Assembly (NCBI RefSeq): GCF_963676685.1
Contig: NC_092344.1
Span: 119,040,001 to 119,104,000 of the forward strand
DNA: 64,000 nucleotides
Reading direction: 5' to 3'
Origin: Mytilus edulis
Taxonomy: Eukaryota
Below the pieces are notes generated by a model. The model made no database searches, was not told the DNA's origin, and saw only the letters and a program-made list of their open reading frames with translations. This document shows positions 44,440 through 58,623 of this stretch, piece by piece. Positions within the stretch are counted from its first letter, which is position 1; each line of letters starts with the position of its first letter. Both the position numbers and the translations under genes were made by a program.

Positions 44440-45168
44440 GAATATTCTGCTGAAAATGTTCCTGAAGTCTTGAATAATGGGAAAAGTTCCTTAGAACTAT
44501 TAGAATCCTTTGTGTGAATACCTTTAAGCATACACTACACAACAAAAGATATACATCTCCAATCACAAAATCATTGCACATGTTCTCATTTGACTACGAA
44601 AATTATTTAGATTTAAAACACCCACAAAAACATTTGTTAACAAAATACAGACTCAGCAATCACTGTTTAAGAATAGAAACTGGCAGACATGAACGAATTA
44701 TCAATGTATGTGGTAAATATGAAATATTACCTCGACATGAGAGGATATGTTTATATTGTAATTCAAATTGTATTGAAAATGAAATGCACTTTCTTCTGGA
44801 ATGCCCTCTTTACAATAACCTTAGAAGAGATGTGACTGATTATATCAAAAAAGTTTAGATAATTCAAACAGAAAAGATCTTTTTTCATAGATCATGATTA
44901 ATGAAGATAGCAGATTTTTATCAATTTTATGTGCATACCTCGATAAAGGCCTGCAACTTAGAAAATCAGAAAATTAGTCAACTTAACTCTAAAACATATC
45001 CAAATTATCTCCCCTTGACCACTGATTCTTTCTTCATGCATTTGAATTATTATTTTATGTTTCTTTAATCACTCTGTAATGTTTATGTCATGTTGTAATT
45101 AATGTTATGCTCTTAATGGGCCCTTTAATTTGGAAAATAAAAATATTTTATTGTATTGTATTGTATTT
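44440..45168 (+). mobile_element. 5'-truncated non-LTR retrotransposon (RTE-X-like) with ORF2 C-terminal zinc finger and (TTGTA)n tail
   Basis: ORF 44514-44858 LTKYRLSNHCLRIETGR...ERICLYCNSNCIENEMHFLLECPLYNNLR; 3' GGGCCC..AATAAA plus pentamer tail; similar tails at about 59390-59450 (+) and 60324-60385 (-). Confidence 0.75.
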
Positions 45169-45628
45169 AACAACTTGTAGATGACATGAGAGTATATAGG
45201 TCTCACCTCTGCCACTTCGAGACAAAGCAAATGCAAATAATGATGGATAGCAAACCTTTTCAAATAAACAGGTTTTTTTTAATTAAAATATGGTTTGGTA
45301 GCTTATCTTTTTCACCACTAAAAACTTTGTTTGCTCAATACTACCACCTTCAGACTACTAAAGCATGCCCCAACTCACAATTCATAGTACGAGAAAGGGA
45401 GCAAGTTTCCCACACAACCAAATAAATGGAGAATGTTTCCAAGGGGGCACAGATGATACCCAAGCTTGTATGTGTTATAAAGAGGCATACTAGAGAACAG
45501 TTTTAAATAGTCTTGCCACAGAGATTCAAAATTTACTTATGTGGTAATTTGCTTTAAATACAGGTTTTCATCACATTTGGTTGAGGGAAACTTAATTGAG
45601 AACAGAAACCAATTTCGGGCCAGACTGG

Positions 45629-45759
45629 TATTGGCAGATCCAGGGAGAGGGTTCCGGGGGGTGGAACCCCCCCCCCCCCTTTTTTTGGATGATCAATGCA
45701 TTTGAATGGGGACATATAGTTGGAATCCCCCATTTTTAAAATGGCTGGATCTGCCCCTC
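45629..45759. mobile_element. Degenerate GC-rich MITE (GGCGGATCCAG family)
   Basis: ggcagatccag / ctggatctgcc TIRs; homologous to 62663-62821. Confidence 0.6.
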
Positions 45760-46472
45760 GTTGGACAAGCTTCATCTGCAGTGGGGGCAAAACTGTTGAC
45801 AATTTAACTTGTCACTGTCAAACTGATTATCAAATATGGAGTCATTCTGGTCAGTAGTACATTTGTAATTTAACTGTAAATGTGTGATGAAAAATTAGTC
45901 AATATTATCAGTATCAAAAAATAAATTGGTTCCAGCATAAAAAAAAAAAAGTGCTGAACAAACCAACAAAGTAATGGCAATATAACCCAAACTTTTTGTT
46001 TAAAATTTGGAAACTACCTAATGATTCTATTTGTTAACTTGTGTCATGTAGTTATAGCTTATGATTGTAATATTTTTTTGGATGATATTCAACGTGACAA
46101 ACTCAATTTTCATCTTCACGGACAACACCAAAAATATATCTTTGTAACAACTAGACTTCTGATTGCCTGTCCGAAAGACATTGGATACAAATCATCAGCT
46201 AAATCTTCTTTGTTTTTGTTTTTATGTATGGGAATGATTTTCATATATGGTCTGCAGCTTGATAATGCCAAGTTCTAGTGTATGAGCAATTTTTACATGT
46301 TAGTACAGCCACTTCCTCTTAGGCTCTATATCTTGTAGATCTTTTATTTTGCAAAGAAAATCTTTGTTTGGTTTAAAATTAAATGAAGATTCCATGACAG
46401 GGTATATCATTGATTGGCAATATATTTCATGCATACAGAAGACAACACTTTTTTCCTCTCATAACATCACAT

Positions 46473-46478
46473 TTTATT
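46473..46478 (-). terminator. RPS12 poly(A) signal
   Basis: AATAAA 7 nt after the stop; a second AATAAA overlaps the TAA. Confidence 0.7.
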
Positions 46479-46485
46479 TGAAAGT

Positions 46486-46548
46486 TTATTTCTTTGATCT
46501 GAAGTATTCGTGAAGAACATCCAGAGCCTGTGATTCTTTTCCATAATC
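46486..46548 (-). CDS. RPS12: 40S ribosomal protein S12 exon 6: DYGKESQALDVLHEYFRSKK*
   Basis: ttctgtttttAG acceptor, phase 0, canonical eS12 C-terminus. Confidence 0.95.
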   Translation of the reverse strand, partial: DYGKESQALDVLHEYFRSKK

Positions 46549-46703
46549 CTAAAAACAGAAATAATACAAATTAGGTCTATACTCGTTAAGCCTCACACTA
46601 TCACGGTATAAACCATTCTATAAAGCAAGCAGTATTGTTTAATATATTGTAAATCAAATGTAGATGTGTCTAGAAGTTTAGACGTGACAAACAATATATA
46701 AAA

Positions 46704-46832
46704 TTATGGTTAGCATTTCTCTCAATATAAATGTTGTAAATCAAGGAAAATCATTGCAATTTTTCTTTACGCATTCTGTTTCTCAATGGGAACTTTTAAG
46801 TTGCTTATGAGCACTGAAGGGTGAAGAATGCA
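46704..46832 (-). ncRNA. Candidate box H/ACA snoRNA in RPS12 intron 5
   Basis: Hairpin TGCATTCT/AGAATGCG with internal pocket and upper stem TTCAGTG/CATTGAG; H box AAAGAA about 14 nt from the pocket; weak second hairpin; ATA variant of the ACA box. Confidence 0.3.
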
Positions 46833-47170
46833 TTAATCTTTAATTAGGAACTAAAAATTTAACATTGTACTATACTAAGCCCTTGAATGCAATGCTATGA
46901 ATTTTTTCAACTACAATCATATAGACAAAGGAAGATAACTCTAGTATATACATTTTGAAAATTCATTCAGCATCAACCATTTATTTTATTTTCCGAGGTA
47001 TGGTTATACATACATACATTTAGTTACTTAAATATTTGGGAAAATGTCTTAATGCGAATATAATTCATTGATAAATTACTTTCTATGTTCATGGACAGGA
47101 TTTATAAAATATTGTGCTCAATACCCTATGTTTTTTTTTCTAAAGCAGTGACTAAGTTGGGAAATTATCA

Positions 47171-47249
47171 AGCCTCAGAGTAGAAATAATTTCCATTGTA
47201 TCCACATCAAACTTCAGAAGAGGGAGCATGGAATTCTTCATCACAGGCT
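47171..47249 (-). ncRNA. SNORD100: Box C/D snoRNA, SNORD100-like, copy 1 (intron 5)
   Basis: Stem AGCCT/AGGCT, C box GTGATGA, guide CATGCTCCCTCT before D' CTGA, D box CTGA. Confidence 0.8.
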
Positions 47250-47331
47250 ATATTTTATCAGGCTAGGGTTCATAAAATGTGGGATGTAATTATGCATGAA
47301 TTTGATAGGAAACAACATATAAATTTATATT

Positions 47332-47661
47332 CTAATGCAACAACGTTTGTAACGTTCATTTTGATTGGATAACGTCACTTTCTTACATGGCATCAATTGA
47401 CAATTGATGCTATGGGACATACGCGCAAGCGCAGACAGCATATGACAGATTTTAAATACATGTTTTAACGTTATTTTCTGTCAGTTTCATTAGAATGGAG
47501 ATAATTGTATTTTAAGCTCCGACGGCATCAATTTGGGATTTGATGGTCGCAAATACCCGTTTACTGTCTCCGCTAACGCGTCGCCAGTAAACTTAATTTG
47601 CGACCATCAAATCCCCAATTGATGCCGTCGGAGCTTAAAATACAATACAGTTATCTCCTAA
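47332..47661. mobile_element. CpG-rich repeat with a long terminal hairpin (arms within 47497-47658); possibly a non-autonomous Crypton-like element
   Basis: Near-perfect inverted arms ...TTTAAGCTCCGACGGCATCAATT.GGGATTTGATGGTCGCAAAT; class assignment uncertain. Confidence 0.55.
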
Positions 47662-47736
47662 TTGCTTCATCCTTGATCAGCAATGTCAGTCTCAGATGCA
47701 GAAAACACTCATCATGTATAAGGGGAGATAACTTAC

Positions 47737-47838
47737 TTTAACAACTACACAGCTACAGCCAACAACTTTCCTGGCCTTTCCTTCTCTATCAATTTTGCAT
47801 AGACCAGCCCATTCTCCTAGTTTCTTGCTGTCATCTAT
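47737..47838 (-). CDS. RPS12: RPS12 exon 5: [34 protein letters not shown]
   Basis: ttttttacAG acceptor, AAA|GTAAGT donor, 102 nt; signature eS12 sequence. Confidence 0.97.
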
Positions 47839-47960
47839 CTGTAAAAAATTCAGAGCATCTTCATAAGAAATGTATTTTAAATATATGTCAGCCTTTTCTA
47901 TATAACTATACAAATTAATCTATCAATCATACACTATGTACCGTATACAAAATATTTATG

Positions 47961-48041
47961 AAACCTCAGAGTAGAAATAATTTCCATTGTATCCACATCA
48001 AACTTCAGAAGAGGGAGCATGGAATTCTTCATCATAGGTTT
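47961..48041 (-). ncRNA. SNORD100: Box C/D snoRNA, SNORD100-like, copy 2 (intron 4)
   Basis: AAACCT-ATGATGA...CATGCTCCCTCTT-CTGA...CTGA-GGTTT. Confidence 0.85.
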
Positions 48042-48459
48042 AAGTGAATTGTTTATGTAAAGGTTGAGGTCCAATGCAATTTATTTTCTGACCATCCCTT
48101 TGAGTTTTAACAGTTTGCAGTAAAACCCTTGCTTAATATGGGCATATGCTTCACAACTATGCTTCGTTGTGAAGCATATACAAAATACAACTTCATGGAG
48201 TAATTTAGACATTTTGAACATTTGCAACAAGAGGTTCCTAATGCATGATAAAATGTCTGCCTCAATCCAAAATGCCTTCATTGCCCAGTTAGAGTCAAGA
48301 TTTGAATACCTTGATCATGGTAAACATACCTTGCAGAACATTAATTCGTTACAAAGCTTTGTTCATTTGTTCTCTTCCAAAATTTACATGAAATATTTTT
48401 TTCACTGGATATTAATCAAACAATCAATCAATAATATACTGAATTTTTATACTCATATA

Positions 48460-48540
48460 AAACCTCAGAGTAGAAATAATTTCCATTGTATCCACATCAA
48501 ACTTCAGAAGAGGGAGCATGGAATTCTTCATCATAGGTTT
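48460..48540 (-). ncRNA. SNORD100: Box C/D snoRNA, SNORD100-like, copy 3
   Basis: Same sequence as copy 2, all boxes intact. Confidence 0.82.
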
Positions 48541-48960
48541 TAATGACCTTTAAGATTGAGGTCCAATTAAAAGTTATTTACTGGTCATCTCTTATACTTT
48601 TACCATCCTGCAGTAAAACCCTTGATAAATATGGGCATATGTTTGGTTGTCAAGTAATATAAAATACAATCACAGATGATATGAATTTGGTTGTTGAATC
48701 GGAGGAATTCTGTTCTTGCAAATTACAGAACATTTGCAACAAGAGGTCCCTGCTACATGACAACATGTCTGCCCAAATCCAACATGCCTTCAAGGCCCAG
48801 TGACAGTCTAGATTTCAACACCTTCATTATGGTAAACATACCTTGCAGAACCTTGGTTATGTAGTTTTGTTCATGTGTTCTCTTCCAACAAAATATACAT
48901 GAAATATTTGCCACTGAGCATAAATCAAGCAACAATCAATCAATAATATACTGTATATTA

Positions 48961-49649
48961 TAGTCCGTTTGACTTCTATAAATCTTCAAAAAATAATTCT
49001 TAAAATTTCATTTTTAAAGATAAATATTTTTTTTCTTCATGTATGTTAATGTATGATATATACGAACTCTGACTATGCATATCATAATTTTAAACCTATA
49101 ATAAAAAAAGTTACTCATTAGGTCTCTATGTTACTTCAATTTATTTTAATATAAAATACTCAATGGAGTACGTATGAGTAGTGTAACAGCCTTCCATTCA
49201 AAACAAAAACATTAGACATGTGCTCTAAACCTGTTTTATTGTACCATGTGACTTTACTCATTTAAATAACTCTGGTCATGTGATTACTGAGCTTTCTGTA
49301 TTCAATGAGAAATACAAAAGCATGCACACATGACCAGAGTTATTTAAATGAGTAAAGTCACATGGTACAATAAAACAGGTTTAGAGCACATGTCTAATGT
49401 TTTTGTTTTGAATGGAAGGCTGTTACACTACTCATACGTACTCCATTGAGTATTTTATATTAAAATAAATTGAAGTAACATAGAGACCTAATGAGTAACT
49501 TTTTTTATTATAGGTTTAAAAATTATGATATGCATAGTCAGAGTTCGTATATATAATACATTAACATACATGAAGAAAAAAAATATTTATCTTTAAAAAT
49601 GAAATTTTAAGAATTATTTTTTGAAGATTTATAGAAGTCAAACGGACTA
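48961..49649. mobile_element. 689-bp foldback MITE with TA target-site duplication
   Basis: Near-perfect inverted arms 48961-49282 and 49327-49649; flanked by TA; empty site CTGTATATTACTTGTC present at about 50146-50161. Confidence 0.9.
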
Positions 49650-49657
49650 TACTTGTC

Positions 49658-49738
49658 AACCCTCCGAGTAGAAATAATTTCCATTGTATCCACACCAAAC
49701 TTCAGAAGAGGGAGCATGGAATTCCTCATCATAGGTTT
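49658..49738 (-). pseudogene. SNORD100: SNORD100-like copy 4, D box mutated to CGGA (probable pseudogene)
   Basis: Homologous to copies 2 and 3 with substitutions in the D box and the C' region. Confidence 0.7.
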
Positions 49739-50161
49739 TAATGACTTAAGTTTGAGGTCCAATTAAAGTTATTTACTGGTCAATCCTAATACTTTTACCA
49801 TCCTGCAGTAAAACCCTTGATAAATATGGGCATATGTTTGGTTGTCGAGAAATATAAAATACAATCACAGATGATATGAATTTGGTTGTTGAATCGGAGG
49901 AATTCTGTTCTTGCAAATTACAGAACATTTGCAACAAGAGGTCCCTGATGCATTACAACATGTTTGCCCCAATCCATCATGCCTTCATTGTACAGTGGCA
50001 GTCTAGATTTCAAGCCCTTCATCATGGTAAACATACCTTGCAGAACTTTCATTATGTAGTTTTGTTCATGTGTTCTCTTCCAACAAAATATACATGAAAT
50101 ATTTGCCACTGAGCATAAATCAAGCAACAATCAATCAATAATATACTGTATATTACTTGTC

Positions 50162-50241
50162 AACCCTCAGAGTAGAAATAATTTCCATTGTATCCACATC
50201 AAACTTAAGAAGAGGGAGCATGGAATTCTTCATCACAGGTT
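50162..50241 (-). ncRNA. SNORD100: SNORD100-like copy 5 (D' box variant CTTA)
   Basis: C box GTGATGA and D box CTGA intact, guide intact. Confidence 0.72.
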
Positions 50242-50737
50242 CAAGTAAATTTTTATGAATATTTTTAAATTTCAGTCACTCAGTGAATCAGTAATTTATT
50301 TCCAATTAAGAATGTGATTAAACACAATTGGAATTTTAATAGAGGTTTTAACATGATACAATTTACAAAGCATATAATTTACTGCCATTTATAGTTCTAC
50401 TAGTCTTCTGGCACCAATTAAGTGATGCCATTCCAATAACATTTAAATTTGTAAGATATGTTCGAGGACAGTCACAGCTGGTTGGAATTGCAATATTAAT
50501 CATGCCACATTTCAGATCTCTTGAAATAACTGACAGAGGGGTTGCCAGTCAAACATTTTGTCCCTATCCTCACATTCCCCCCCCTTCTCCAAAGGCATTC
50601 CAAAAGACCACATTTACCAAGGCCAACCTTCTCGACAGACGATTTGTTCTCATTTGGAATATGACCAAAATATAAGCCACTGGACATTAATCAATCTTCA
50701 AGCGATCAACCAACATACATTATGAATAATATTTATA

Positions 50738-50818
50738 AAACCTCAGAGTAGAAATAATTTCCATTGTATCCACATCAAACTTCAGAAGAGGGAGCATGGA
50801 ATTCTTCATCATAGATTT
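50738..50818 (-). ncRNA. SNORD100: SNORD100-like copy 6
   Basis: All boxes intact; terminal stem AAATCT/AGGTTT keeps pairing through a G-U pair. Confidence 0.8.
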
Positions 50819-51968
50819 TGGTGGCTGTTTAACACTTTCCTTACTGATTTTTTGTTTACCGTGACGTTGTGTGACCTGATCAAATTTCAGGACGTTGTTT
50901 ACCAGGCCTGAATTAATTTGACGTGTGACTGAAGAAAAAGTGACGTTTTGTAAAAAACGTTTGTATCTTTGTTGTTTCTCATCAAATCGGGTTCAAACTC
51001 GATAGTTTTACACTTAAGTATGAAAGGATCGTTGCAATACAAACAAATTTACATGACAATACATACTTTTGACATGTTTTAACCTTTAGTTGGAGGAAAA
51101 TGACGTTTTATTTGAGAAATCATTTTTTTTTTGTGACCGGTTTATGTTTATTCCTTCCATCTTCTAAATTAACACTGCAAACGGTAATTAACACCTATCG
51201 AGTGTTCCTTTATCAAAGTTTTATGGAAAAAATAACTCCAGAGTCAAAATTCTAGCTCAATGGTGTGAATAAACACGAATGAAAATGGTATGTCAAATTC
51301 TCCGGCGGCCATTTTTTACCTGTACAGTATGCAATCAGATGACTCTGAACAAGTTGGAGTTGTCTTTCTTGGTCCAATGTTTTCTTTGTATTTTTGCATT
51401 GATTTAGATATAAACTGACTATTGGGATCTTTTGTGGATTTATTAAAATTTTGTGGAGATATCAAATACTATTTTTTCTGGTACAATCATGAATTCTTTT
51501 CCAGATTCATATGTGCTTTTTTAAATGAATGTGCATGCATATATATTTTTTCTGGTTTTGTTTTGTATCATGGAAATATTATTCCAATGTATTCTGATCT
51601 GACACACCAATATACATGTATGAATATTTAACACTTCAATATCTTGATAAACTAAGTGAGACTCTTTAAAAACAATAATGAACTTACTATGATTTATTTA
51701 AATAATTATCTGTGTCAGTTTCTATGAGATGCTAGAATTTCCAGTCTTTGGTTGTGTATTGTTCAATGATGAAAATAATTAAATGTTCTTTAAAATTTGG
51801 AATATTGTTGATCAAAAATTAATAAATGAAACTGTCAACTGTAACAACAATTATAAATTATGAATATCCTTTCAACAAACAATGAAAATCCTCTCAACAA
51901 ATGATGAATATCTTTTCAGCAAATTATGTATTTTCCTTCAACTTCATGTGTAACAAAGTAACTGTCAA

Positions 51969-53729
51969 TTAAGAAGTGTAATTTCTGACTGAGTGGTAGA
52001 CTGTAAAGCAATGTGGCATGCAAAGGTGTTTGCTACATTCTACGCAACCATATTTTGTCTGACGCCTTTTTTCCTGAGTATCATTAGCTACCCTATGCCA
52101 GCATACATGACACCATGTCTTGTTACCCAAATCTGCTGGTAAATGTCTGTGTGTAAGTCTGACTTCTACAGGTAGGTTAGATGGCCTCCCCCTACGGTTG
52201 TCCCTTGTGGTATACCCTGCAATGAGTTGAGTTGCAACTGATTTAGAAAAATCCAAATAGGTCATTGATGTAGTTTGCTGGTGATTTGGTGACATTTGTA
52301 ACAGACGGTAAGCATTAAACTTAATAATTTCCAGCATCTTGAAGAACACTCTCTTTGGCCATTTATTTGTTTTGTGACAGAAGAAATAGTACTGTATGTA
52401 CTGGTCACAACGGTCGACACCGCCCATGTGGCTGGTGTAATCTGCAACCATCTTTGGACATTGGAGTTGCTGCCTTTGGAATTGTCCTTCTTGTTGAACA
52501 ATTCTACTCACTTCCGTCAAGCTGTTGTCATGGATGGTAGATATCACAGAAACATTTTTCTTGTCTTTCCATACTGTAGCTGAAATTGCCCCCTTTTGCC
52601 TAAATTGACTGTCTCCTCTCTGTGTAATACCAACAGGCTTCTTTGTCATTAAATCCTGTGGTAAGCCTCTTCTGTTTTGACGGACTGTTCCACAGGCTCC
52701 AGTGTCAAGATTTTCAAATAAGTTGGTGAACAATTCAGGACTGGAAAAGTAGTTATCCATGTAAACATGGTAACCTTGTCTGGATAAATTGGCACCTTCA
52801 AGACAGGAAATAACGACAGTGCTAGCCAACCCTACATGGGTTCGATCTGTTTTGCCCTGGTAGATTTTACAAAATGACATATACCCAGTGTCAGACTCTG
52901 CCAACGCCCAGAGCTTGATTCCCCATTTTGTTGGTTTTGCAGGCATGTATTGTTTCAAGGCAACCCTTCCCTTGTATGGTATCATACACTCATCTATTGA
53001 TACATTTCTTTTAGGTATATATTGATCCCTCATTTGTTGGTTAAGGGCGTCCATAAAGTATCTGACTTTGTAAGTACTGTCGTAGTTAGGCTCCCCTCTT
53101 TGTGGAACTCGCTGGTGAGGATCAGTAAAGTGTAGATATCTCATAATTTGCATGAACCTGTCACGTGCCAAAACTGTGGGAAAATATGGGGTTTCCAGAC
53201 AATCTTTAGACCAGTAGGATTTTAAATCTGGCTTTACATCAATACCCATTAGGAAAGTTAAACCAATAAAAGCCTTCATCTCGGGCAAGGAGGGACAAGA
53301 CCAAGCTGACTTGTGTAGGTCAGGATTCAAATCTTTTTGCATGTTTGCATAGCCATCACTTTTCTCAATTATCTGTTGTAAAAGGTGGTCAGATAAGAAC
53401 AGTTGGAAAAAGTCAATTATATCCTTCTCTGGGCCTAATATATTTTGTGGACCAGTAGTATTTCTAGGTTGGAACAGATGGGGGAGACCTCTTTCATAAA
53501 TATCAAACTCTTGGTGCCATCCATCATTGTTGGGTGCATCACCGGCATTATTTACGTCAACAAGTTGTGGTTCATCATTATTGTCATCAGACAGTTCACT
53601 TTCGACATCACTTATCAGAAAATCATCACCAATGCCGTTTTGGGCTAATTGCACTTGATATCTTTGGCATGCAAGTTCGATTTCACCCGCCGAAAACCCC
53701 TCAAACTCGTCCTCTGAAGTGTCGGACAT
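51969..53729 (-). CDS. piggyBac transposase (PGBD4-like), 586 aa
   Basis: Acidic N-terminus, SIDECMIPYKGR, YMPAKPTKWGIK, YMDNYFSS, MGGVDRCDQ (DDD triad), C-terminal Cys-rich domain CHVC..CVEC..LC..HCF..YH; no stops. Confidence 0.96.
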   Translation of the reverse strand: MSDTSEDEFEGFSAGEIELACQRYQVQLAQNGIGDDFLISDVESELSDDNNDEPQLVDVNNAGDAPNNDGWHQEFDIYERGLPHLFQPRNTTGPQNILGPEKDIIDFFQLFLSDHLLQQIIEKSDGYANMQKDLNPDLHKSAWSCPSLPEMKAFIGLTFLMGIDVKPDLKSYWSKDCLETPYFPTVLARDRFMQIMRYLHFTDPHQRVPQRGEPNYDSTYKVRYFMDALNQQMRDQYIPKRNVSIDECMIPYKGRVALKQYMPAKPTKWGIKLWALAESDTGYMSFCKIYQGKTDRTHVGLASTVVISCLEGANLSRQGYHVYMDNYFSSPELFTNLFENLDTGACGTVRQNRRGLPQDLMTKKPVGITQRGDSQFRQKGAISATVWKDKKNVSVISTIHDNSLTEVSRIVQQEGQFQRQQLQCPKMVADYTSHMGGVDRCDQYIQYYFFCHKTNKWPKRVFFKMLEIIKFNAYRLLQMSPNHQQTTSMTYLDFSKSVATQLIAGYTTRDNRRGRPSNLPVEVRLTHRHLPADLGNKTWCHVCWHRVANDTQEKRRQTKYGCVECSKHLCMPHCFTVYHSVRNYTS

Positions 53730-54287
53730 TTTTGTATTTTCAAAATGTTACAGACGACATTTTACTATATTTACTACGATTTTGGCGTCCTTGACACCGA
53801 GCAAGTGGGAGAGGAAAGTGATTGGATAGTTTTATTTAGATTTTCCATAAAAGGAGTGCGACCTTTTGCACTCGTGGGAAAATGGAATAGCCGCGCCCAC
53901 GGAAGTCCAATTATTACTTGACTTTTATTCTCCGTGAAGTTTTGAAAAGCATTTTTCGTTATTCTAATCATTATATAAATCAAATTAATAATGAAATTAT
54001 ATTTGACTTTCCTTCCAAATAACATTTTCTTGACCTAAAAGGTCACATGTTCGCATCACATGTCTTGTACAAAATGGCGACGACTTATTTTGTTTGTTGA
54101 CGCTACCGATCTTTCATTGTACTATGGTAAATATTAGGCGTCAAACTCAGTAAGAATACGTATTCCTATACTGTAACATGCAAGCTTGTTGAAAACCTTG
54201 ATATTTATTGGGTTAAACGTAGCTTTACGGGGGAAATGAGTTAAAAAGACGAAAATTATTTTCATCACGTGATTGTAATGCATGAAA

Positions 54288-54369
54288 GCATTGTTCGGCC
54301 TGGCTACGGGGATGACTCAACGCATTGTTCGGCCTGGCTACGGGGATGCCTCAATGCATTGTTCGCCTT
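54288..54369. repeat. 34-bp subterminal tandem repeat of the piggyBac 5' end
   Basis: GCATTGTTCG(G)CCT at 54288, 54322 and 54356. Confidence 0.85.
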
Positions 54370-54701
54370 GAAAGGGTTAAAGATCATATCCACTAGCTAA
54401 CACCACTAAATTTCATTTTATTAACAAGATATATTGACTAGGGTATATGAATAGGGTCAACCTTGAAGTAAAACCCTGGTCACAAAATTTCAATCTTAAT
54501 ATTCGTAAGATCCTGCATCCATGTCTTGCTTACAAAGATCTGACAATACCTTGTTTTAATGTCCTGAAGGTGTATGAAATATTTGCCACTGGACATGTTG
54601 TTGGGACGAACAACTATCAATCAATCATTATAATTTATATATGATATATCCAATGTGAGTCTAATCATAATTCATATAAATAATTTAACATCATGTTTTA
54701 C

Positions 54702-54804
54702 CTTCAATAGATTAATGCCATGTTCTGTACAGAGTGCTTCAACTAACTTAACGTAAGCTGGTTCGTCACAGTTGTTGGCCAAGATGCAAAGATGGGCTTG
54801 ACGT
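54702..54804 (-). CDS. RPS12: RPS12 exon 4: (K)[34 protein letters not shown]
   Basis: catctttcAG acceptor, AAG|GTAAAA donor, 103 nt, phase 2/0. Confidence 0.97.
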
Positions 54805-54825
54805 CTGAAAGATGAATACTAATTT

Positions 54826-54970
54826 TTGTGTTCTGCATTTGATTAAAGAAATACAGTTGATAAAATTAAGCTAACTGTCAAATGCATTACTCTGTGAATA
54901 GTGTTACCTTTACTAATTTAATAAAAATCTGACTTTTGTGATTGTCTAAAACCAGATTTAATCTATCCAT
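54826..54970 (-). ncRNA. Weak candidate box H/ACA RNA in RPS12 intron 3
   Basis: Hairpin TGGATAG/CTATTCA, H box AGAGTA, hairpin TGCATTTGA/TCAAATGCA, then ACA; pockets asymmetric. Confidence 0.25.
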
Positions 54971-54984
54971 GTAAACTTATATGT

Positions 54985-56228
54985 CAGGGCTCACGCTACC
55001 AGGCGACTTGGGCGAAGAAGTCGCCTTCCCGACCGTCACTTCGCTTTCCCCGACCCCCAAAAGCGAAATCAAGTCGCCCTGTTCTTGACGATACTCGCTT
55101 TCAGTCGCTTCCGTCATCGGACATTTTCAATTTTTACCAAATTGATGAAACATCAATTTTTTATTGATAATTAAAGAAATTCAGACATAAACGATTCATT
55201 ATCTTTAGAAAAGAGGTTGAAGCATTGTCTTCGCAGTATGTAGCAGGTTATTTGATAAAAATACAACTTTTTATCACTTCATGCATTTTCGCAAGTTCCG
55301 GTGCTTGTTACTCGAAAACGTACATCAACCTAAATTTCGGCGGCAAAATAAGTTTGTTACTTCATTTAAACGTGATAAAAGTTGCCTCCAGTAAATGTTT
55401 AATCCATTTATTGCATTAAAAACGTCATGTTCCTTTTCAAATAACTTGTCAAACATCGTTTATTTTTGTAAATTTTCTTGCATTCATCCGCCATTGACCG
55501 ATTTCTAAACTACGGATCTGAACGGGACCAGCTATGACCGAAATCCGTACTTTTACAATAATTACTACGGACGCAACAGCTGACAGAAGAATATTGATCC
55601 CAAAGGGAAAAAATACGCATTCCACACACATTAAGAGACTTTTGGTTACATCTAATTGATTGGTGTATATAATTCCCTATATTTTTTATGGATTGTTTCA
55701 AACTATTGATTAAAGTTGCTTAACTCTGAGACTATTATACTAATTTCAATATATTATGGCCCAGCTTAATAACTTTTATATTTTTTTATGAGAAACACTT
55801 TCAATATATTATGGCCCAGCTTAATAACTTTTATATTTTTTTATGAGAAACACTGAATTTCATACACAAGATAATTTTTAATTAAATTGTAATAATGATA
55901 TATTATAATTTCTTTACATTTTTTAAAATATTTTTTTTTTTTAGTGCTAGATATTTAGTTGGAATAAGTTTCTCACAAGAACCTTAGTAAAACTTAAACA
56001 ACTTTTAATTTCAAATGTTACTTAAATTGTATTTTTTTTACTCAGATATGAATTGAACAATATAAAAAGAACATTATTTACATATAGCCCTTTATACTAT
56101 TGTAAAATCCAAATATTGTAGTGCACCGCGCGAATGAGCACTTCTCTTTCAAATTTCACCACTTCTCCCTATCAGTTTCAAAAAGAGAAGTCACTTCTCC
56201 CTATAATTCTGAAGTAGTGTGAGCCCTG
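54985..56228. mobile_element. Non-autonomous DNA transposon with CAGGG ends and a 5-bp TSD (hAT5-like)
   Basis: TIR CAGGGCTCACGCTAC / GTAGTGTGAGCCCTG, TATGT on both flanks, subterminal GTCGC and CACTTCTC repeats. Confidence 0.82.
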
Positions 56229-56391
56229 TATGTTTCTTTCATTTTGCAAATTTTAAAAAGCAATTTTGTTTACTTTTAAAAAGTCTTGAAAAACTTGTTA
56301 TAGTCTCTTGCTATTTAAGGCATTGTAAATCATTGATGCCTTATAAAGAATAATGAATAAAGCTGTATAATTATATATATCCCAAACTAAC

Positions 56392-56520
56392 TTGTCAAGT
56401 GCCTTGGCACACTCATGAAGGCCTCTTGCTAAGCCATCGTGGATTAAAGATGTCTTGAGAACTTCCTGTAGAGCTGTATATATATCCATAACTCCTCCTG
56501 CTGCCATGGGAACATCATCT
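56392..56520 (-). CDS. RPS12: RPS12 exon 3: (G)[42 protein letters not shown](K)
   Basis: gcttttAG acceptor, CAA|GTTAGT donor, 129 nt, phase 2/2; eS12 signature. Confidence 0.97.
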
Positions 56521-56931
56521 CTAAAAGCATAAATTAAACTCTCTGCTGCTTACAAGTTTTCTTAAAATTGCTTGCAATATCATGAAGATGTAATCTGAAT
56601 TTTAATGAGAAAGCAATCTACCAATTGCAAGGAGGGGTGAAAATTGGCAGACCAGTTAGAATAAATTTGTTACCTATATGATACTTTCTTTAAAAATTAT
56701 AGAAATAAACACGATCTTTATGTCTAAATACAATGTACTTGAACATATGAGCATAAATTATCAATTAAATAGCCTGTTTTAGTTTTTTTTTTATATTCAA
56801 CAGAATATTGGACCTTTAAACTACTTCCCAGTATCTCCACAATTGCAACAAATCGTCAAAGAAACTTATTTATCAAGTTTGGTTCACCCAATTTATGAAC
56901 GAAAATATATTGTATAAATGGTATAACATAC

Positions 56932-56951
56932 CCTTCCGTATCCGATGCCAT
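56932..56951 (-). CDS. RPS12: RPS12 exon 2 coding part: MASDTE(G); exon spans 56932-56976; full protein 138 aa
   Basis: aaaaATGg start context, AGG|GTATGT donor phase 2, tttcAG acceptor at 56978-56977. Confidence 0.88.
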
Positions 56952-57040
56952 TTTTGGTTTGGAGACGGACGTCCTTCTGAAATTACATCAAAACAAACAG
57001 ATCATAACTTGCAACAAATCTATAGGTAGGATTGCATTAC

Positions 57041-57091
57041 TGTGTCGTGCCTTCTGAAGATAAGAATTTCACAGCCAGAAAAGTACACGTG
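57041..57091 (-). promoter_or_regulatory. RPS12: RPS12 non-coding exon 1 with 5' TOP/TCT start (CTTTTCT, 57083-57077) and adjacent E-box CACGTG (57086-57091)
   Basis: Pyrimidine start typical of ribosomal protein mRNAs; ACA|GTAATG donor; 64-nt intron 1. Confidence 0.7.
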
Positions 57092-58623
57092 TCCCAGTGA
57101 AAGTAGGGAAATGTAGTTTGTGCAAATAATATCAGGTACAAACCATACTCAAATAGTCTCTTTACAGTAATTTTTTTTTGGAATATTTGCAGGAGTGGAC
57201 ATGCATGTTTTGTTTGTTCTGCTTTTGTTGTTGGGTTTAATAGCTTTTTAGAGCTTCTTTTTAATAGTCCACTTTCGAATTCATCCGCCAACGAAAAAAA
57301 ATCATCAATTATACGCGCCTTTATGACGTCATTTACCAGATAGAGGGGATCTCCTGTATCCCTGAAATATTAACGTTCATCAAGCGTCTTAGTGCAGGAT
57401 AAACAAGAAATTCAGTTTTATTTTGTAAGTACCTTATCACAATTCCCTAATGACAGCAGTGCTGATTTGTCGATTATGAAAATTTAATTAGCTGAATAAT
57501 AATCGTGCAATACAGCATTATAATTTTCCAACCACTAGCTCAACATTAGAACGGAAGCGATGTTCACTAAAACCAGAGTTTTTGACGGATATGCATCAAA
57601 CTCGAAACTTGTCTTTTGTAAAGTACAAGTTCTGATCAAAATTAAGCTTCAAGTTTCACATTTATATGTCAAAGTAAAGTTATAGAAAAATACAACATAT
57701 ATAGGTAAATAACGTTGAAAAATCCTCACTAATGCTCAACTATTAATAACGCTTTTTCTAATACCTGGCAAAAAAAGGTAAGTATAATGTAGATTGTGCT
57801 CATCTTCGTTATATTTTAGCACATACTAACATAGTGCATTTTCCATTTCCCACAAATTATGGGGCACATCTGTTTCTATTTAAAAAACAATGACCTGCAT
57901 ATGGGCTCAGAAACCTTAAAAGGTTCGACTTGTCATGGGTCAGATATGATAGATATGAATTTCAACGTTATCACATTGTATCTCAGCTTTCTTATGAATT
58001 GCAATGTAAAATCCAGCCTTCAAGACTACATGACGAGTGCACCTTTATACGTGAAGTAAATGATGCAAGTTTCTTGTCGCATACACAACATTTTCATAAC
58101 AATTAGAACATTAACTAAATACAGAAACATAGAACTTCATTAACATAAAAAAAGAAAATGCTAATGACTATAAACTTTAAAGGATGGCAACAGATTGAAT
58201 TTGCAAATTACTAACAATGATGTCCTAACGTGTAGATAAAATTCAAAAAGGAAGTCCAAGACAGACTTCCGGAACAGTGAAAAGGGTTGATTAAAAGACA
58301 GATTTTATTTTGTGGGTTTATTTTGCAAGTTTATGTTTGAGGGTTTAATGTTTGAAACCGATGATTCTGATGTTAAAGGTCCCGGGTTCGATTCAGAATC
58401 GGGGCACTAGAAATTTCATTACATCACAATGGTGATTTCAAACTCCCTCACACTCCTCTGGTACCCAGACCGGAGTATAAACAAGAATGGGTACTTCGGG
58501 GGCCTCGGTTGATCAAAAGTTGCCCTCTACTTTGACCTGGAGATCAATCTTCTGATATTTGTCTGTTCTCACTGAGTGCCACAGTGGTTTTCTCATAGTA
58601 CTTTGGCTTCCTCCACCGTATTA

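What the first reader, a model, noticed from the sequence alone, without database searches (positions are those of the whole stretch)
47171..50818. Six-copy SNORD100-like snoRNA array inside RPS12, five copies in a single intron
Seen: an approximately 80-nt unit with a terminal stem, C box (RTGATGA), D', C' and D boxes occurs six times on the RPS12 sense strand (47171, 47961, 48460, 49658, 50162, 50738). The copies are nearly identical while most spacers are clearly diverged, which suggests purifying selection or gene conversion on the snoRNA. Known: vertebrate RPS12 hosts SNORD100, and intronic C/D snoRNAs in vertebrates usually occur one per intron because they are released by debranching and exonucleolytic trimming. 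Inference: the host-snoRNA pairing is conserved between molluscs and vertebrates, but here it is amplified into a cluster that needs an extra release mechanism.
Basis: partly seen in the sequence, partly recalled or inferred. Interest (0 to 1): 0.85.

Follow-up and report, generated by a model that had tools for sequence, protein, structure and literature searches.

The report
SNORD100-like snoRNA array in RPS12 introns
A mollusc ribosomal-protein gene (RPS12) carries six local copies of the small guide RNA that its vertebrate and sponge counterparts carry once, five of them in one intron; the gene-guide pairing is already published and multi-copy intronic clusters are known elsewhere, so this is a well-documented new example, not a new kind of system.

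Summary
Six ~83-nt box C/D units lie on the minus strand, which is the RPS12 sense strand. They are the only copies in the 1.37-Gb genome. One sits in the last intron. Five sit in the 6.9-kb intron between exons 54804-54702 and 47838-47737, which RNA contigs from three organisms join directly.

The D' guide pairs over 13 bp with the genome's own 18S rRNA. It selects the same G as the Rfam SNORD100 consensus guide. Rfam scores stay below the curated threshold (29.9 bits against 58).

SNORD100 in RPS12 from sponges to man is already published (PMC3412847). Intronic snoRNA clusters are known from rice and Drosophila.

New details:
- Copies c2, c3 and c6 are identical over 70 nt and c1 differs at one base, although their flanks are diverged.
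- c4 (D box CGGA) and c5 (D' CUUA) differ from each other about as much as their spacers do, so they look like decaying copies.
- The repeat unit is the snoRNA plus a fragment of a dispersed repeat.
- An unrelated metagenome contig carries two copies in the homologous RPS12 intron.

No small-RNA evidence was available, and how the copies are released is untested. Earlier scan notes concern this same stretch, not other DNA.

The parts
47168..47251 (-). Copy c1. Boxes intact; stem AGCC/GGCT; C box GUGAUGA. It is the only copy in the last RPS12 intron (46549-47736).
   Evidence: the intron is defined by the RNA joint
47959..48042 (-). Copy c2. Boxes intact. It ends about 120 nt upstream of the acceptor of exon 47838-47737.
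48458..48542 (-). Copy c3. Boxes intact; 7-bp terminal stem; best Rfam SNORD100 score (29.9 bits).
49656..49740 (-). Copy c4. D box CGGA, C' UGGUGU, and an A-to-G change next to the C box. Probably decaying.
   Evidence: the fold is no better than shuffles
50160..50244 (-). Copy c5. D' box CUUA. A contig of organism B also shows a C-box change here (50230 T>C on the plus strand). Probably decaying.
   Evidence: (table 3)
50736..50820 (-). Copy c6. Boxes intact; the stem has a U-G wobble. It lies about 10 nt from the TTAA end of the piggyBac insertion.
56393..56507 (-). RPS12 (eS12) coding exon, MAAGG...ALDK
54702..54804 (-). RPS12 coding exon, RQAHL...INLLK. Its donor opens the 6.9-kb intron that holds c2-c6.
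47737..47838 (-). RPS12 coding exon, IDDSKK...VVVK
46486..46548 (-). Coding part of the last RPS12 exon, (D)YGKES...RSKK plus the stop codon
50037..50108 (-). Candidate cryptic 72-nt exon. Its acceptor lies 51 nt after c5, its donor is AAG|GUAUGU, and it has in-frame stops. Not shown to be used.
48842..48913 (-). Candidate cryptic 72-nt exon, a paralogue of the previous one. It lies 742 nt after c4 because of the palindromic insertion.
48330..48404 (-). Candidate cryptic 75-nt exon. Its acceptor lies 53 nt after c3, it has the same donor, and it has in-frame stops.
49965..50139 (-). Fragment of a dispersed ~175-nt repeat directly downstream of c5. Paralogous fragments follow c4, c3 and, more diverged, c6. 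It supplies the acceptor-like CAG|UGG.
48959..49651 (.). Near-perfect 693-bp palindromic MITE with a TA target duplication, inserted between c4 and its downstream flank.
   Evidence: high DNA depth
50829..54380 (-). piggyBac-type element (TTAA to TTAA) with an open 586-aa transposase ORF at 51969-53729, in the same intron and the same orientation.

Best explanation
These are six local paralogues of the SNORD100 (HBII-429) box C/D snoRNA, carried in sense orientation in two introns of the highly expressed ribosomal-protein gene RPS12 (eS12).

Shown:
- The units have full box C/D anatomy.
- The D' guide (CAUGCUCCCUCUU followed by CUGA) pairs over 13 bp with the genome's own 18S rRNA. It places the fifth-nucleotide rule on G397 of that 18S, the same G in the conserved GAGAGGGAGC motif that the vertebrate SNORD100 guide selects (human Gm436).
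- The guide follows a lineage-specific 18S change (GCAUG here, against the GCC complementary to the Rfam consensus guide).
- The host gene is spliced exactly around the two snoRNA-bearing introns.

Inferred: each intact copy (c1, c2, c3, c6) assembles with the core box C/D proteins on the RPS12 pre-mRNA or the excised intron. It is then trimmed by exonucleases to an ~80-nt snoRNP that directs 2'-O-methylation of that 18S G.

Origin: an ancestral unit of snoRNA plus an adjacent dispersed-repeat fragment was duplicated in tandem (unit about 500 bp), with older copies at c6 and c1. The four intact copies are held identical by selection and/or gene conversion. The youngest pair, c4 and c5, is drifting and has hit box positions.

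Release of the five copies that share one intron (inferred, not tested): c2 and c1 can follow the ordinary lariat-debranching-trimming route from the intron ends. Internal copies need a cut in the spacers. I rate endonucleolytic entry, as assumed for the intronic clusters of rice and Drosophila, somewhat more likely than internal splicing at the cryptic exons.
For: - Six copies, and only here in the genome.
- Box anatomy and alignment. Terminal stems form in every minimum-energy fold. There is one compensatory and one wobble change in the stem.
- The D' guide has one 13-bp match in the whole rDNA unit, at 18S nt 393-405. It has the same guide sequence and register as the Rfam SNORD100 consensus.
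- SNORD100 is the best Rfam family for five of the six copies. Among the 60 of about 60,900 first-look candidates that were scored, c3 and c6 were the only SNORD100 matches reported for the genome.
- The host exons match eS12 of solved ribosomes at E 1e-15 to 1e-16.
- Spliced joints occur in RNA contigs of three runs and not in the DNA run. The loose end at 47840 equals the exon end at 54704.
- Cores: c2 = c3 = c6 with 0 differences in 70 nt, and c1 with 1 in 70, while the flanks are at the identity level of random sequence (0.59-0.65) or 71-84%.
- A second, unrelated RPS12 locus (metagenome contig L010) has two SNORD100-like copies in the homologous intron, with the same stem, C box and D' guide.
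- Published: SNORD100 sits in RPS12 from sponges to vertebrates and guides 18S Gm436 (PMC3412847). The Gm436 site and guide family are ancient (PMC3511168).
Against: - Rfam's gathering score is not reached (29.9 bits against 58).
- No RNA of snoRNA size was seen. The available runs are contigs, apparently of mRNA-type libraries, and show no excess depth over the copies.
- The D guide, invariant in all six copies, has no rDNA target and is not conserved in L010.
- Stem covariation is not significant with only six sequences.
- Identity among copies could come from gene conversion without each copy being functional.
Confidence: 0.82

Rival explanations
1. Release by internal splicing. The repeat-derived cryptic exons between the copies (50108-50037, 48913-48842, 48404-48330, and a weak one after c6) would be used either in NMD-targeted isoforms or in nested splicing inside the big intron. 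Each snoRNA would then end up in its own lariat, as in SNHG/GAS5-type host genes or the SNORD116 repeat units.
For: An acceptor-like CAG with a T-rich tract lies 51-53 nt after c5 and c3, and about 57 nt after c6. It is followed 72-75 nt later by AAG|GUAUGU. The GUAUGU donor is absent from a dispersed copy of the same repeat. All three candidates carry in-frame stops, as poison exons do. The copy displaced 742 nt from its acceptor by the MITE (c4) is the one with a broken D box. L010 has a CAG|GUAGAG site between its two copies.
Against: No junction involving these sites appeared among the joints shown. Low-depth RNA contigs run unspliced across the donors and one acceptor, and the abundant mRNA joins the flanking exons directly. 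The constant spacing and the splice-like motifs are shared by descent within one duplicated unit, so they count as one observation, not three. The acceptor motif is intrinsic to the dispersed repeat. The c4 coincidence is a single case.
Confidence: 0.25
2. Only the end copies mature as snoRNAs. The stretch between them persists as a long RNA capped by snoRNPs at both ends (a sno-lncRNA), or the internal copies are simply degraded with the intron.
For: In mammals, introns hosting more than one snoRNA give sno-lncRNAs because exonucleases stop at the outer snoRNPs (PMC10557570). Low-depth intronic contigs exist in all three RNA runs.
Against: The internal copy c3 is identical to c2 and c6 over 70 nt although its spacers are 71-84% identical. 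That is hard to explain if c3 yields nothing useful. The intronic depth is about 0.1-1% of exon depth, as expected for ordinary pre-mRNA.
Confidence: 0.15
3. The array is mostly redundant duplication. One or two copies are functional and the rest are kept similar only by gene conversion or by youth.
For: c4 and c5 differ from each other at 5 of 70 positions, about the same as their spacers (92-95% identity). Both have box mutations, and c5 has a further C-box change in organism B.
Against: The flanks of c1 and c6 are unalignable with the others, yet their cores differ at 0-1 of 70 positions. With spacer identity near 0.78, the chance of 70 unchanged bases between c2 and c3 is about 3e-8. Identity stops sharply at the stem, which fits selection better than long conversion tracts.
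Confidence: 0.2
4. The array is an assembly artefact or a collapsed or expanded repeat.
For: None specific. Short-read contigs break inside the repeated cores (table 8).
Against: Every unique junction between a copy and its flank is covered by contigs with no differences in a DNA run (46628-47202, 47638-47990, 48012-48485, 48511-48752, 50210-50763). Spacer contigs are also present in RNA runs labelled as two other organisms. The copies carry distinct stems and flanks. The DNA run may come from the assembled sample, so it is not fully independent.
Confidence: 0.02

Closest known systems
SNORD100 (HBII-429, Rfam RF00609) in RPS12 of vertebrates, sponges, cnidarians and placozoans (Perina et al. 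2012, PMC3412847)
   Same: Box C/D snoRNA in a sense-strand intron of RPS12. The D' guide GCUCCCUCU-N-CUGA selects the same 18S G (human Gm436). In mouse it lies in intron 4 (PMC10287158).
   Different: Six copies here instead of one, spread over two introns. The guide is extended to match the lineage's own 18S (GCAUG). The D-guide half is unrelated. The score is below Rfam's gathering threshold.
Intronic snoRNA gene clusters of rice and Drosophila (Liang et al. 2002; Huang et al. 2004, 2005; cited in PMC2780460)
   Same: Several snoRNA genes inside a single intron of a host gene, often paralogous isoforms produced by local duplication.
   Different: I found no description of this in a mollusc in the searched literature. 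Here the cluster is a C/D homo-array inside a ribosomal-protein gene whose orthologues carry one copy. The repeat unit includes a fragment of a dispersed repeat.
SNORD116/SNORD115 tandem units and SNHG/GAS5/UHG host genes
   Same: Tandem units of 'snoRNA plus short non-coding exon', one snoRNA per intron, with the spliced product often an NMD target. This is the architecture the cryptic exons would give.
   Different: Those hosts are non-coding and their exons are demonstrably spliced. Here the units are nested in an intron of a coding gene and exon use is not shown.
sno-lncRNAs (introns with two snoRNAs; reviewed in PMC10557570)
   Same: More than one snoRNA in one intron, which predicts snoRNP-capped long RNAs.
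   Different: No such RNA has been observed here. There are five copies, not two.

Membership tests
box C/D snoRNA | C box RUGAUGA near the 5' end and D box CUGA near the 3' end | tested here: met
   All six copies have RUGAUGA. Five have CUGA and c4 has CGGA.
box C/D snoRNA | A short terminal stem that brings the C and D boxes together | tested here: met
   Stems of 4-7 bp appear in every minimum-energy fold. 83% of cells are paired, against 22-69% when the partner is slid. There is one G-C/A-U compensatory change. This is not statistically significant with six sequences.
box C/D snoRNA | An antisense element of at least 10 bp ending next to D or D', with the target nucleotide opposite the fifth position | tested here: met
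   The D' guide makes 12 Watson-Crick pairs plus 1 G-U with the genome's own 18S nt 393-405, and this is unique in the rDNA unit. The D guide has no target.
box C/D snoRNA | A stable ~80-nt RNA bound by fibrillarin, Nop56, Nop58 and Snu13 | not testable with these tools
   Only contigs of public runs were available.
SNORD100 (RF00609) | Reaches Rfam's gathering score (58 bits) | tested here: not met
   Best score 29.9 bits, with E 0.0033 in 6.5 kb and E 0.17 genome-wide. The second-species copy in L010 scores 33 bits. The sponge orthologues were likewise identified from the conserved guide and boxes.
SNORD100 (RF00609) | The guide selects the 18S G equivalent to human Gm436 | tested here: met
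   The guide sequence and distance to D' match the Rfam consensus, and the guide pairs with GAGAGGGAGC in the genome's own 18S. Equivalence to human position 436 rests on PMC3412847 and PMC3511168, not on an alignment made here.
SNORD100 (RF00609) | Hosted in a sense-strand intron of RPS12 | tested here: met
   The exons match eS12, and spliced joints flank the copies.
intronic snoRNA gene cluster | Two or more snoRNA genes within one spliced intron | tested here: met
   c2-c6 lie between the exons ending at 54702 and starting at 47838, which RNA contigs join directly. L010 has two copies in the homologous intron.
intronic snoRNA gene cluster | Each member yields a mature snoRNA | not testable with these tools
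   No small-RNA reads were available.
SNHG / SNORD116-type unit (snoRNA plus exon) | The exons between snoRNAs are spliced into RNA | tested here: inconclusive
   Candidate sites exist. No junction appears among the joints shown, but contigs drop rare forms and 52 joints were not listed.

The most novel reading that the evidence does not exclude
A fragment of a dispersed repeat that was duplicated together with the snoRNA has been turned into a series of cryptic poison or nested exons. These would divide one intron of a protein-coding ribosomal gene into one-snoRNA lariats. RPS12 would then contain a miniature SNORD116/SNHG-like snoRNA factory, whose output could be set by alternative splicing independently of the mRNA.
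Probability: 0.2. Interest if true: 0.7.

Novelty: new member of a known kind. Interest (0 to 1): 0.38.

Why it matters
This locus shows a deeply conserved host-guide pair (SNORD100 in RPS12) changing in copy number. It contains intact copies held identical, two young copies visibly decaying, and transposon insertions that altered their spacing. That makes it a compact natural experiment on three questions: what keeps an intronic snoRNA functional, whether position relative to a splice site matters outside vertebrates, and how animals release several snoRNAs from one intron. The second point bears on the general rule of one snoRNA per intron. None of this overturns current understanding.

Tried and rejected
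- Rfam at gathering thresholds gave no hit in the whole window. Permissive scans of the other RPS12 introns found no further snoRNA family. My own C/D motif scan of 46000-58500 found only these copies.
- D-guide target: nothing in 18S, 5.8S or 28S, even allowing one mismatch. snRNAs were not checked.
- Structured cleavage sites in the spacers: only spacer 48043-48459 folds better than shuffles (z -3.2). This is due to a private 16-bp palindrome that its paralogues lack. The other two spacers tested are at z +0.2 and -0.5. There is therefore no conserved hairpin that would mark an RNase III-type site.
- TE-borne or retroposed snoRNA: rejected, because there are no copies elsewhere in the genome.
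- Metagenome scan with the exact core found nothing. A looser pattern gave the single contig L010.
I therefore could not fetch the RPS12 loci of the named molluscs and annelids found (Haliotis, Mizuhopecten, Dreissena, Pinctada, Mactra, Paralvinella, Lamellibrachia), and copy number across bivalves remains unknown.
- Species identity: eS12 is too conserved to place the genome. The best named match is Haliotis at 89% over the exons.
- The odd backward joint 50705 to 48898 in run X3 (table 5c) was left unexplained. It probably reflects homology between repeat fragments.
- The spliced protein was never joined. Exons were searched one by one by reference.
Full report
**What is there**

A repeat search of 45000-53000 finds one family of six ~108-nt direct repeats, starting at 47148, 47939, 48438, 49636, 50140 and 50716. 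A profile built from them finds exactly six matches in the 64-kb window, all on the minus strand. A DNA search of the whole 1.37-Gb assembly finds only these six. The window contains no N.

Read on the minus strand, every unit has the layout of a box C/D snoRNA. In order:
- a 4-7-bp terminal stem;
- RUGAUGA (C box);
- a 20-nt spacer;
- CUGA (D');
- AGUU;
- UGAUGU (C');
- a 25-nt spacer;
- CUGA (D);
- the other half of the stem.

The stems form in the minimum-energy fold of all six copies. Across the copies, 83% of stem cells pair, against 22-69% when the partner strand is slid. The stem shows one compensatory change (G-C in c1, A-U in c2, c3 and c6) and one wobble change in c6. With six sequences this is not statistically significant.

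**The host gene**

Minus-strand exons at 56507-56393, 54804-54702, 47838-47737 and 46548 downward translate to eS12. Two of them, searched separately by reference, match 40S ribosomal protein S12 chains of solved ribosomes at E about 1e-16 and 1e-15.

I laid public contigs on 46300-51300.
- Three runs guessed to be RNA, labelled as three different organisms, contain the joint 46547/47736. This skips 1188 nt with GT..AG ends on the minus strand. A DNA-like run lacks the joint.
- In the same three runs, contigs that end at 47840 continue with letters that occur once in the window, at 54704, which is the end of the upstream exon.

So c1 lies in the last intron (46549-47736). Copies c2-c6 lie in one 6.9-kb intron that the abundant mRNA removes as a whole. 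About 4.2 kb of that intron is recent insertion:
- a piggyBac-type element from TTAA to TTAA at 50829-54380, with an open 586-aa transposase ORF (PF13843, E 1e-86);
- a 693-bp near-perfect palindromic MITE at 48959-49651.

**What the RNA would do**

I took the genome's own rDNA unit. The element upstream of D' pairs with 18S nt 393-405 (GAGAGGGAGCAUG) through 12 Watson-Crick pairs and one G-U. This is the only match of that quality in 18S, 5.8S and 28S. The fifth-nucleotide rule puts the methyl group on G397.

The Rfam SNORD100 consensus has the same guide (GGCUCCCUCU, one nucleotide, CUGA) in the same register, so it selects the same G of the same motif. The guide here reads AUGCUCCC where the vertebrate consensus reads GGCUCCC, and the 18S of this genome reads GCAUG. 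The guide therefore follows its own rRNA.

SNORD100 is reported to guide human 18S Gm436, and the target sequence is conserved down to sponges (PMC3412847). The site and guide family are counted among the ancient ones (PMC3511168).

The D-box guide is identical in all six copies. It has no rDNA target and is not conserved in the second species described below. I treat it as an orphan guide.

**Family membership**

At Rfam's curated thresholds nothing in the window scores. With permissive thresholds, SNORD100 is the best family for five copies: 29.9, 28.3, 26.5, 24.4 and 21.4 bits, against a gathering score of 58, with a best E-value of 0.0033. In a genome-wide search that scored only 60 of about 60,900 first-look candidates, the two reported matches are c3 and c6.

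The curated threshold is therefore not met. The guide, its register and the host gene are met. I call the units SNORD100 orthologues by target and host, not Rfam-certified members.

**How the copies relate**

Over the 70 nt from the C box to the D box:
- c2, c3 and c6 are identical;
- c1 differs at one base (the R of the C box);
- c5 differs at two, including D' CUUA;
- c4 differs at three (D box CGGA, C' UGGUGU, and one base next to the C box).

Flanks of 150 nt are at the identity level of random window sequence (0.59-0.65; random mean 0.595) for most pairs. The exception is the three spacers 48043-48459, 48542-48958 and 49740-50160, which are homologous at 71-95%.

With spacer identity near 0.78, 70 unchanged bases between c2 and c3 have a chance of about 3e-8. 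The flanks of c1 and c6 are not alignable at all. Four copies are therefore held constant, by selection, gene conversion or both.

By contrast, c4 and c5 belong to the youngest duplicate pair (spacers 92-95% identical) and differ from each other at 5 of 70 positions. That is as much as their spacers differ, and the changes fall in boxes. A contig from organism B adds a C-box change in c5 (50230 T>C on the plus strand, giving GUGAUGG, table 3). These two copies look like decaying genes.

**The repeat unit**

The ~175 nt directly downstream of c5, c4 (beyond the MITE) and c3, and in diverged form c6, are a fragment of a dispersed repeat. That repeat has at least 187 first-look candidates elsewhere in the genome at 70-75% identity. 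So the snoRNA and an adjacent repeat fragment were duplicated together.

This fragment supplies an acceptor-like CAG|UGG behind a T-rich tract, 51-53 nt after c5 and c3. In the three RPS12 paralogues an AAG|GUAUGU donor follows 72-75 nt later. A dispersed copy lacks that donor. All three candidate exons carry in-frame stops.

Earlier first-reader notes on this same stretch proposed these features as poison mini-exons (s1-834662). They also pointed out that the copy separated from its acceptor by the MITE is the one with the broken D box (s1-834979). I confirm both the sequence features and the coincidence. However, the motifs are shared by descent, so they count as one observation. No junction using them appeared among the joints shown. 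Low-depth RNA contigs run unspliced across them. Contigs cannot exclude rare forms.

**A second species**

A pattern of C box plus the lineage-type guide found one metagenome contig, L010 (Ga0049105_1025796, 4197 bp). It is another RPS12 gene: its exons read ...GINLIK / VEDNKKLGEW...VVVK / DYGKESQ.... It has two SNORD100-like units, at about 750-835 and 1271-1340, inside the 1.03-kb intron homologous to the five-copy intron here. One of them scores 33 bits on SNORD100.

Their stem (AGCC/GGCU), C box (GUGAUGA) and D' guide match c1. The D-guide half does not. The closest named eS12 proteins to this contig are from annelids and molluscs, at 80-83%. Its organism is unknown.

Duplication of SNORD100 within this intron is therefore not unique to one genome. 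A CAG|GUAGAG site lies between the two copies. I note it without weight.

**Mechanism**

Shown: the anatomy, the guide-target pairing, the host splicing, and the pattern of conservation and decay.

Inferred: snoRNP assembly on the intron and exonucleolytic trimming after debranching, which is the standard route (PMC10557570). This is sufficient for c1 and for the copies nearest the intron ends.

For the internal copies, three routes are open:
- endonucleolytic cuts in the spacers, as assumed for intronic clusters;
- internal splicing at the cryptic exons;
- no separation, which would give sno-lncRNA-like species.

I found no conserved hairpin in the spacers that would mark a specific cleavage site. 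I rank unspecific endonucleolytic entry first, cryptic-exon splicing second (about 0.25) and sno-lncRNA third. None of these is tested.

**Comparison and novelty**

The host-guide pairing is published for sponges, cnidarians, placozoans and vertebrates. In mouse, Snord100 lies in Rps12 intron 4. The intronic gene cluster as an organisation was described in rice and then Drosophila and is listed in current reviews.

I found no paper on mollusc snoRNA organisation. This is a new example of a known kind. It has instructive evolutionary detail, plus an untested but attractive splicing hypothesis.

**Limits**

- No small-RNA or raw-read data were available, and the single read-laying run returned contigs only.
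- The DNA run that supports every copy-flank junction with no differences (table 8) may be from the assembled sample itself.
- The species was not identified.

Noticed in passing
window 50829-54380 (ORF 51969-53729, minus): A piggyBac-type element bounded by TTAA on both sides, with short similar ends (C[A/C]CTTTC) and an uninterrupted 586-aa DDE_Tnp_1_7 transposase ORF. It sits in sense orientation in the RPS12 intron and ends about 10 nt upstream of snoRNA copy c6.
   Followed up: partly
window 48959-49651: A 693-bp near-perfect palindrome (arms 100% and 94% complementary) with TA target duplication and ends TAGTCCGTTTGAC. It is high-copy in the DNA run. In the pre-mRNA it would form a roughly 320-bp double-stranded hairpin between c4 and c3.
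   Followed up: partly
window 47330-47660: A very high-copy element (DNA contig depth 20,000-70,000 against about 5 in neighbouring bins) in the last RPS12 intron, just upstream of c1. It contains a 51-bp hairpin (47504-47554 / 47596-47646) that scores on a plant miRNA model (MIR5998, 55 bits, below threshold). It is probably a MITE.
   Followed up: no
L010 596-1627 (metagenome contig Ga0049105_1025796): An RPS12 gene of an unidentified invertebrate with two SNORD100-like copies in one 1.03-kb intron. Copy A carries small internal duplications in its guide and D-box regions. A CAG|GTAGAG site at 957 lies between the copies. The first two coding exons of the window's gene are fused in this contig.
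   Followed up: partly
window 48140-48180: A private 16-bp perfect palindrome in the spacer between c3 and c2, absent from the paralogous spacers. It makes that spacer fold better than shuffles (z -3.2).
   Followed up: no
window 50705 / 48898 (run X3, table 5c): A contig of organism B joins 50705 back to 48898 with 27 other letters in between. This could be a different arrangement of the array in that organism or a cross-match between repeat fragments.
   Followed up: no
own rDNA, G000:C312 (locus L009), 18S nt 393-405: The 18S of this genome reads GGGAGCAUGAG where the vertebrate SNORD100 consensus guide implies GGGAGCC. The snoRNA guide carries the matching change, which extends the duplex to 13 bp.
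   Followed up: partly
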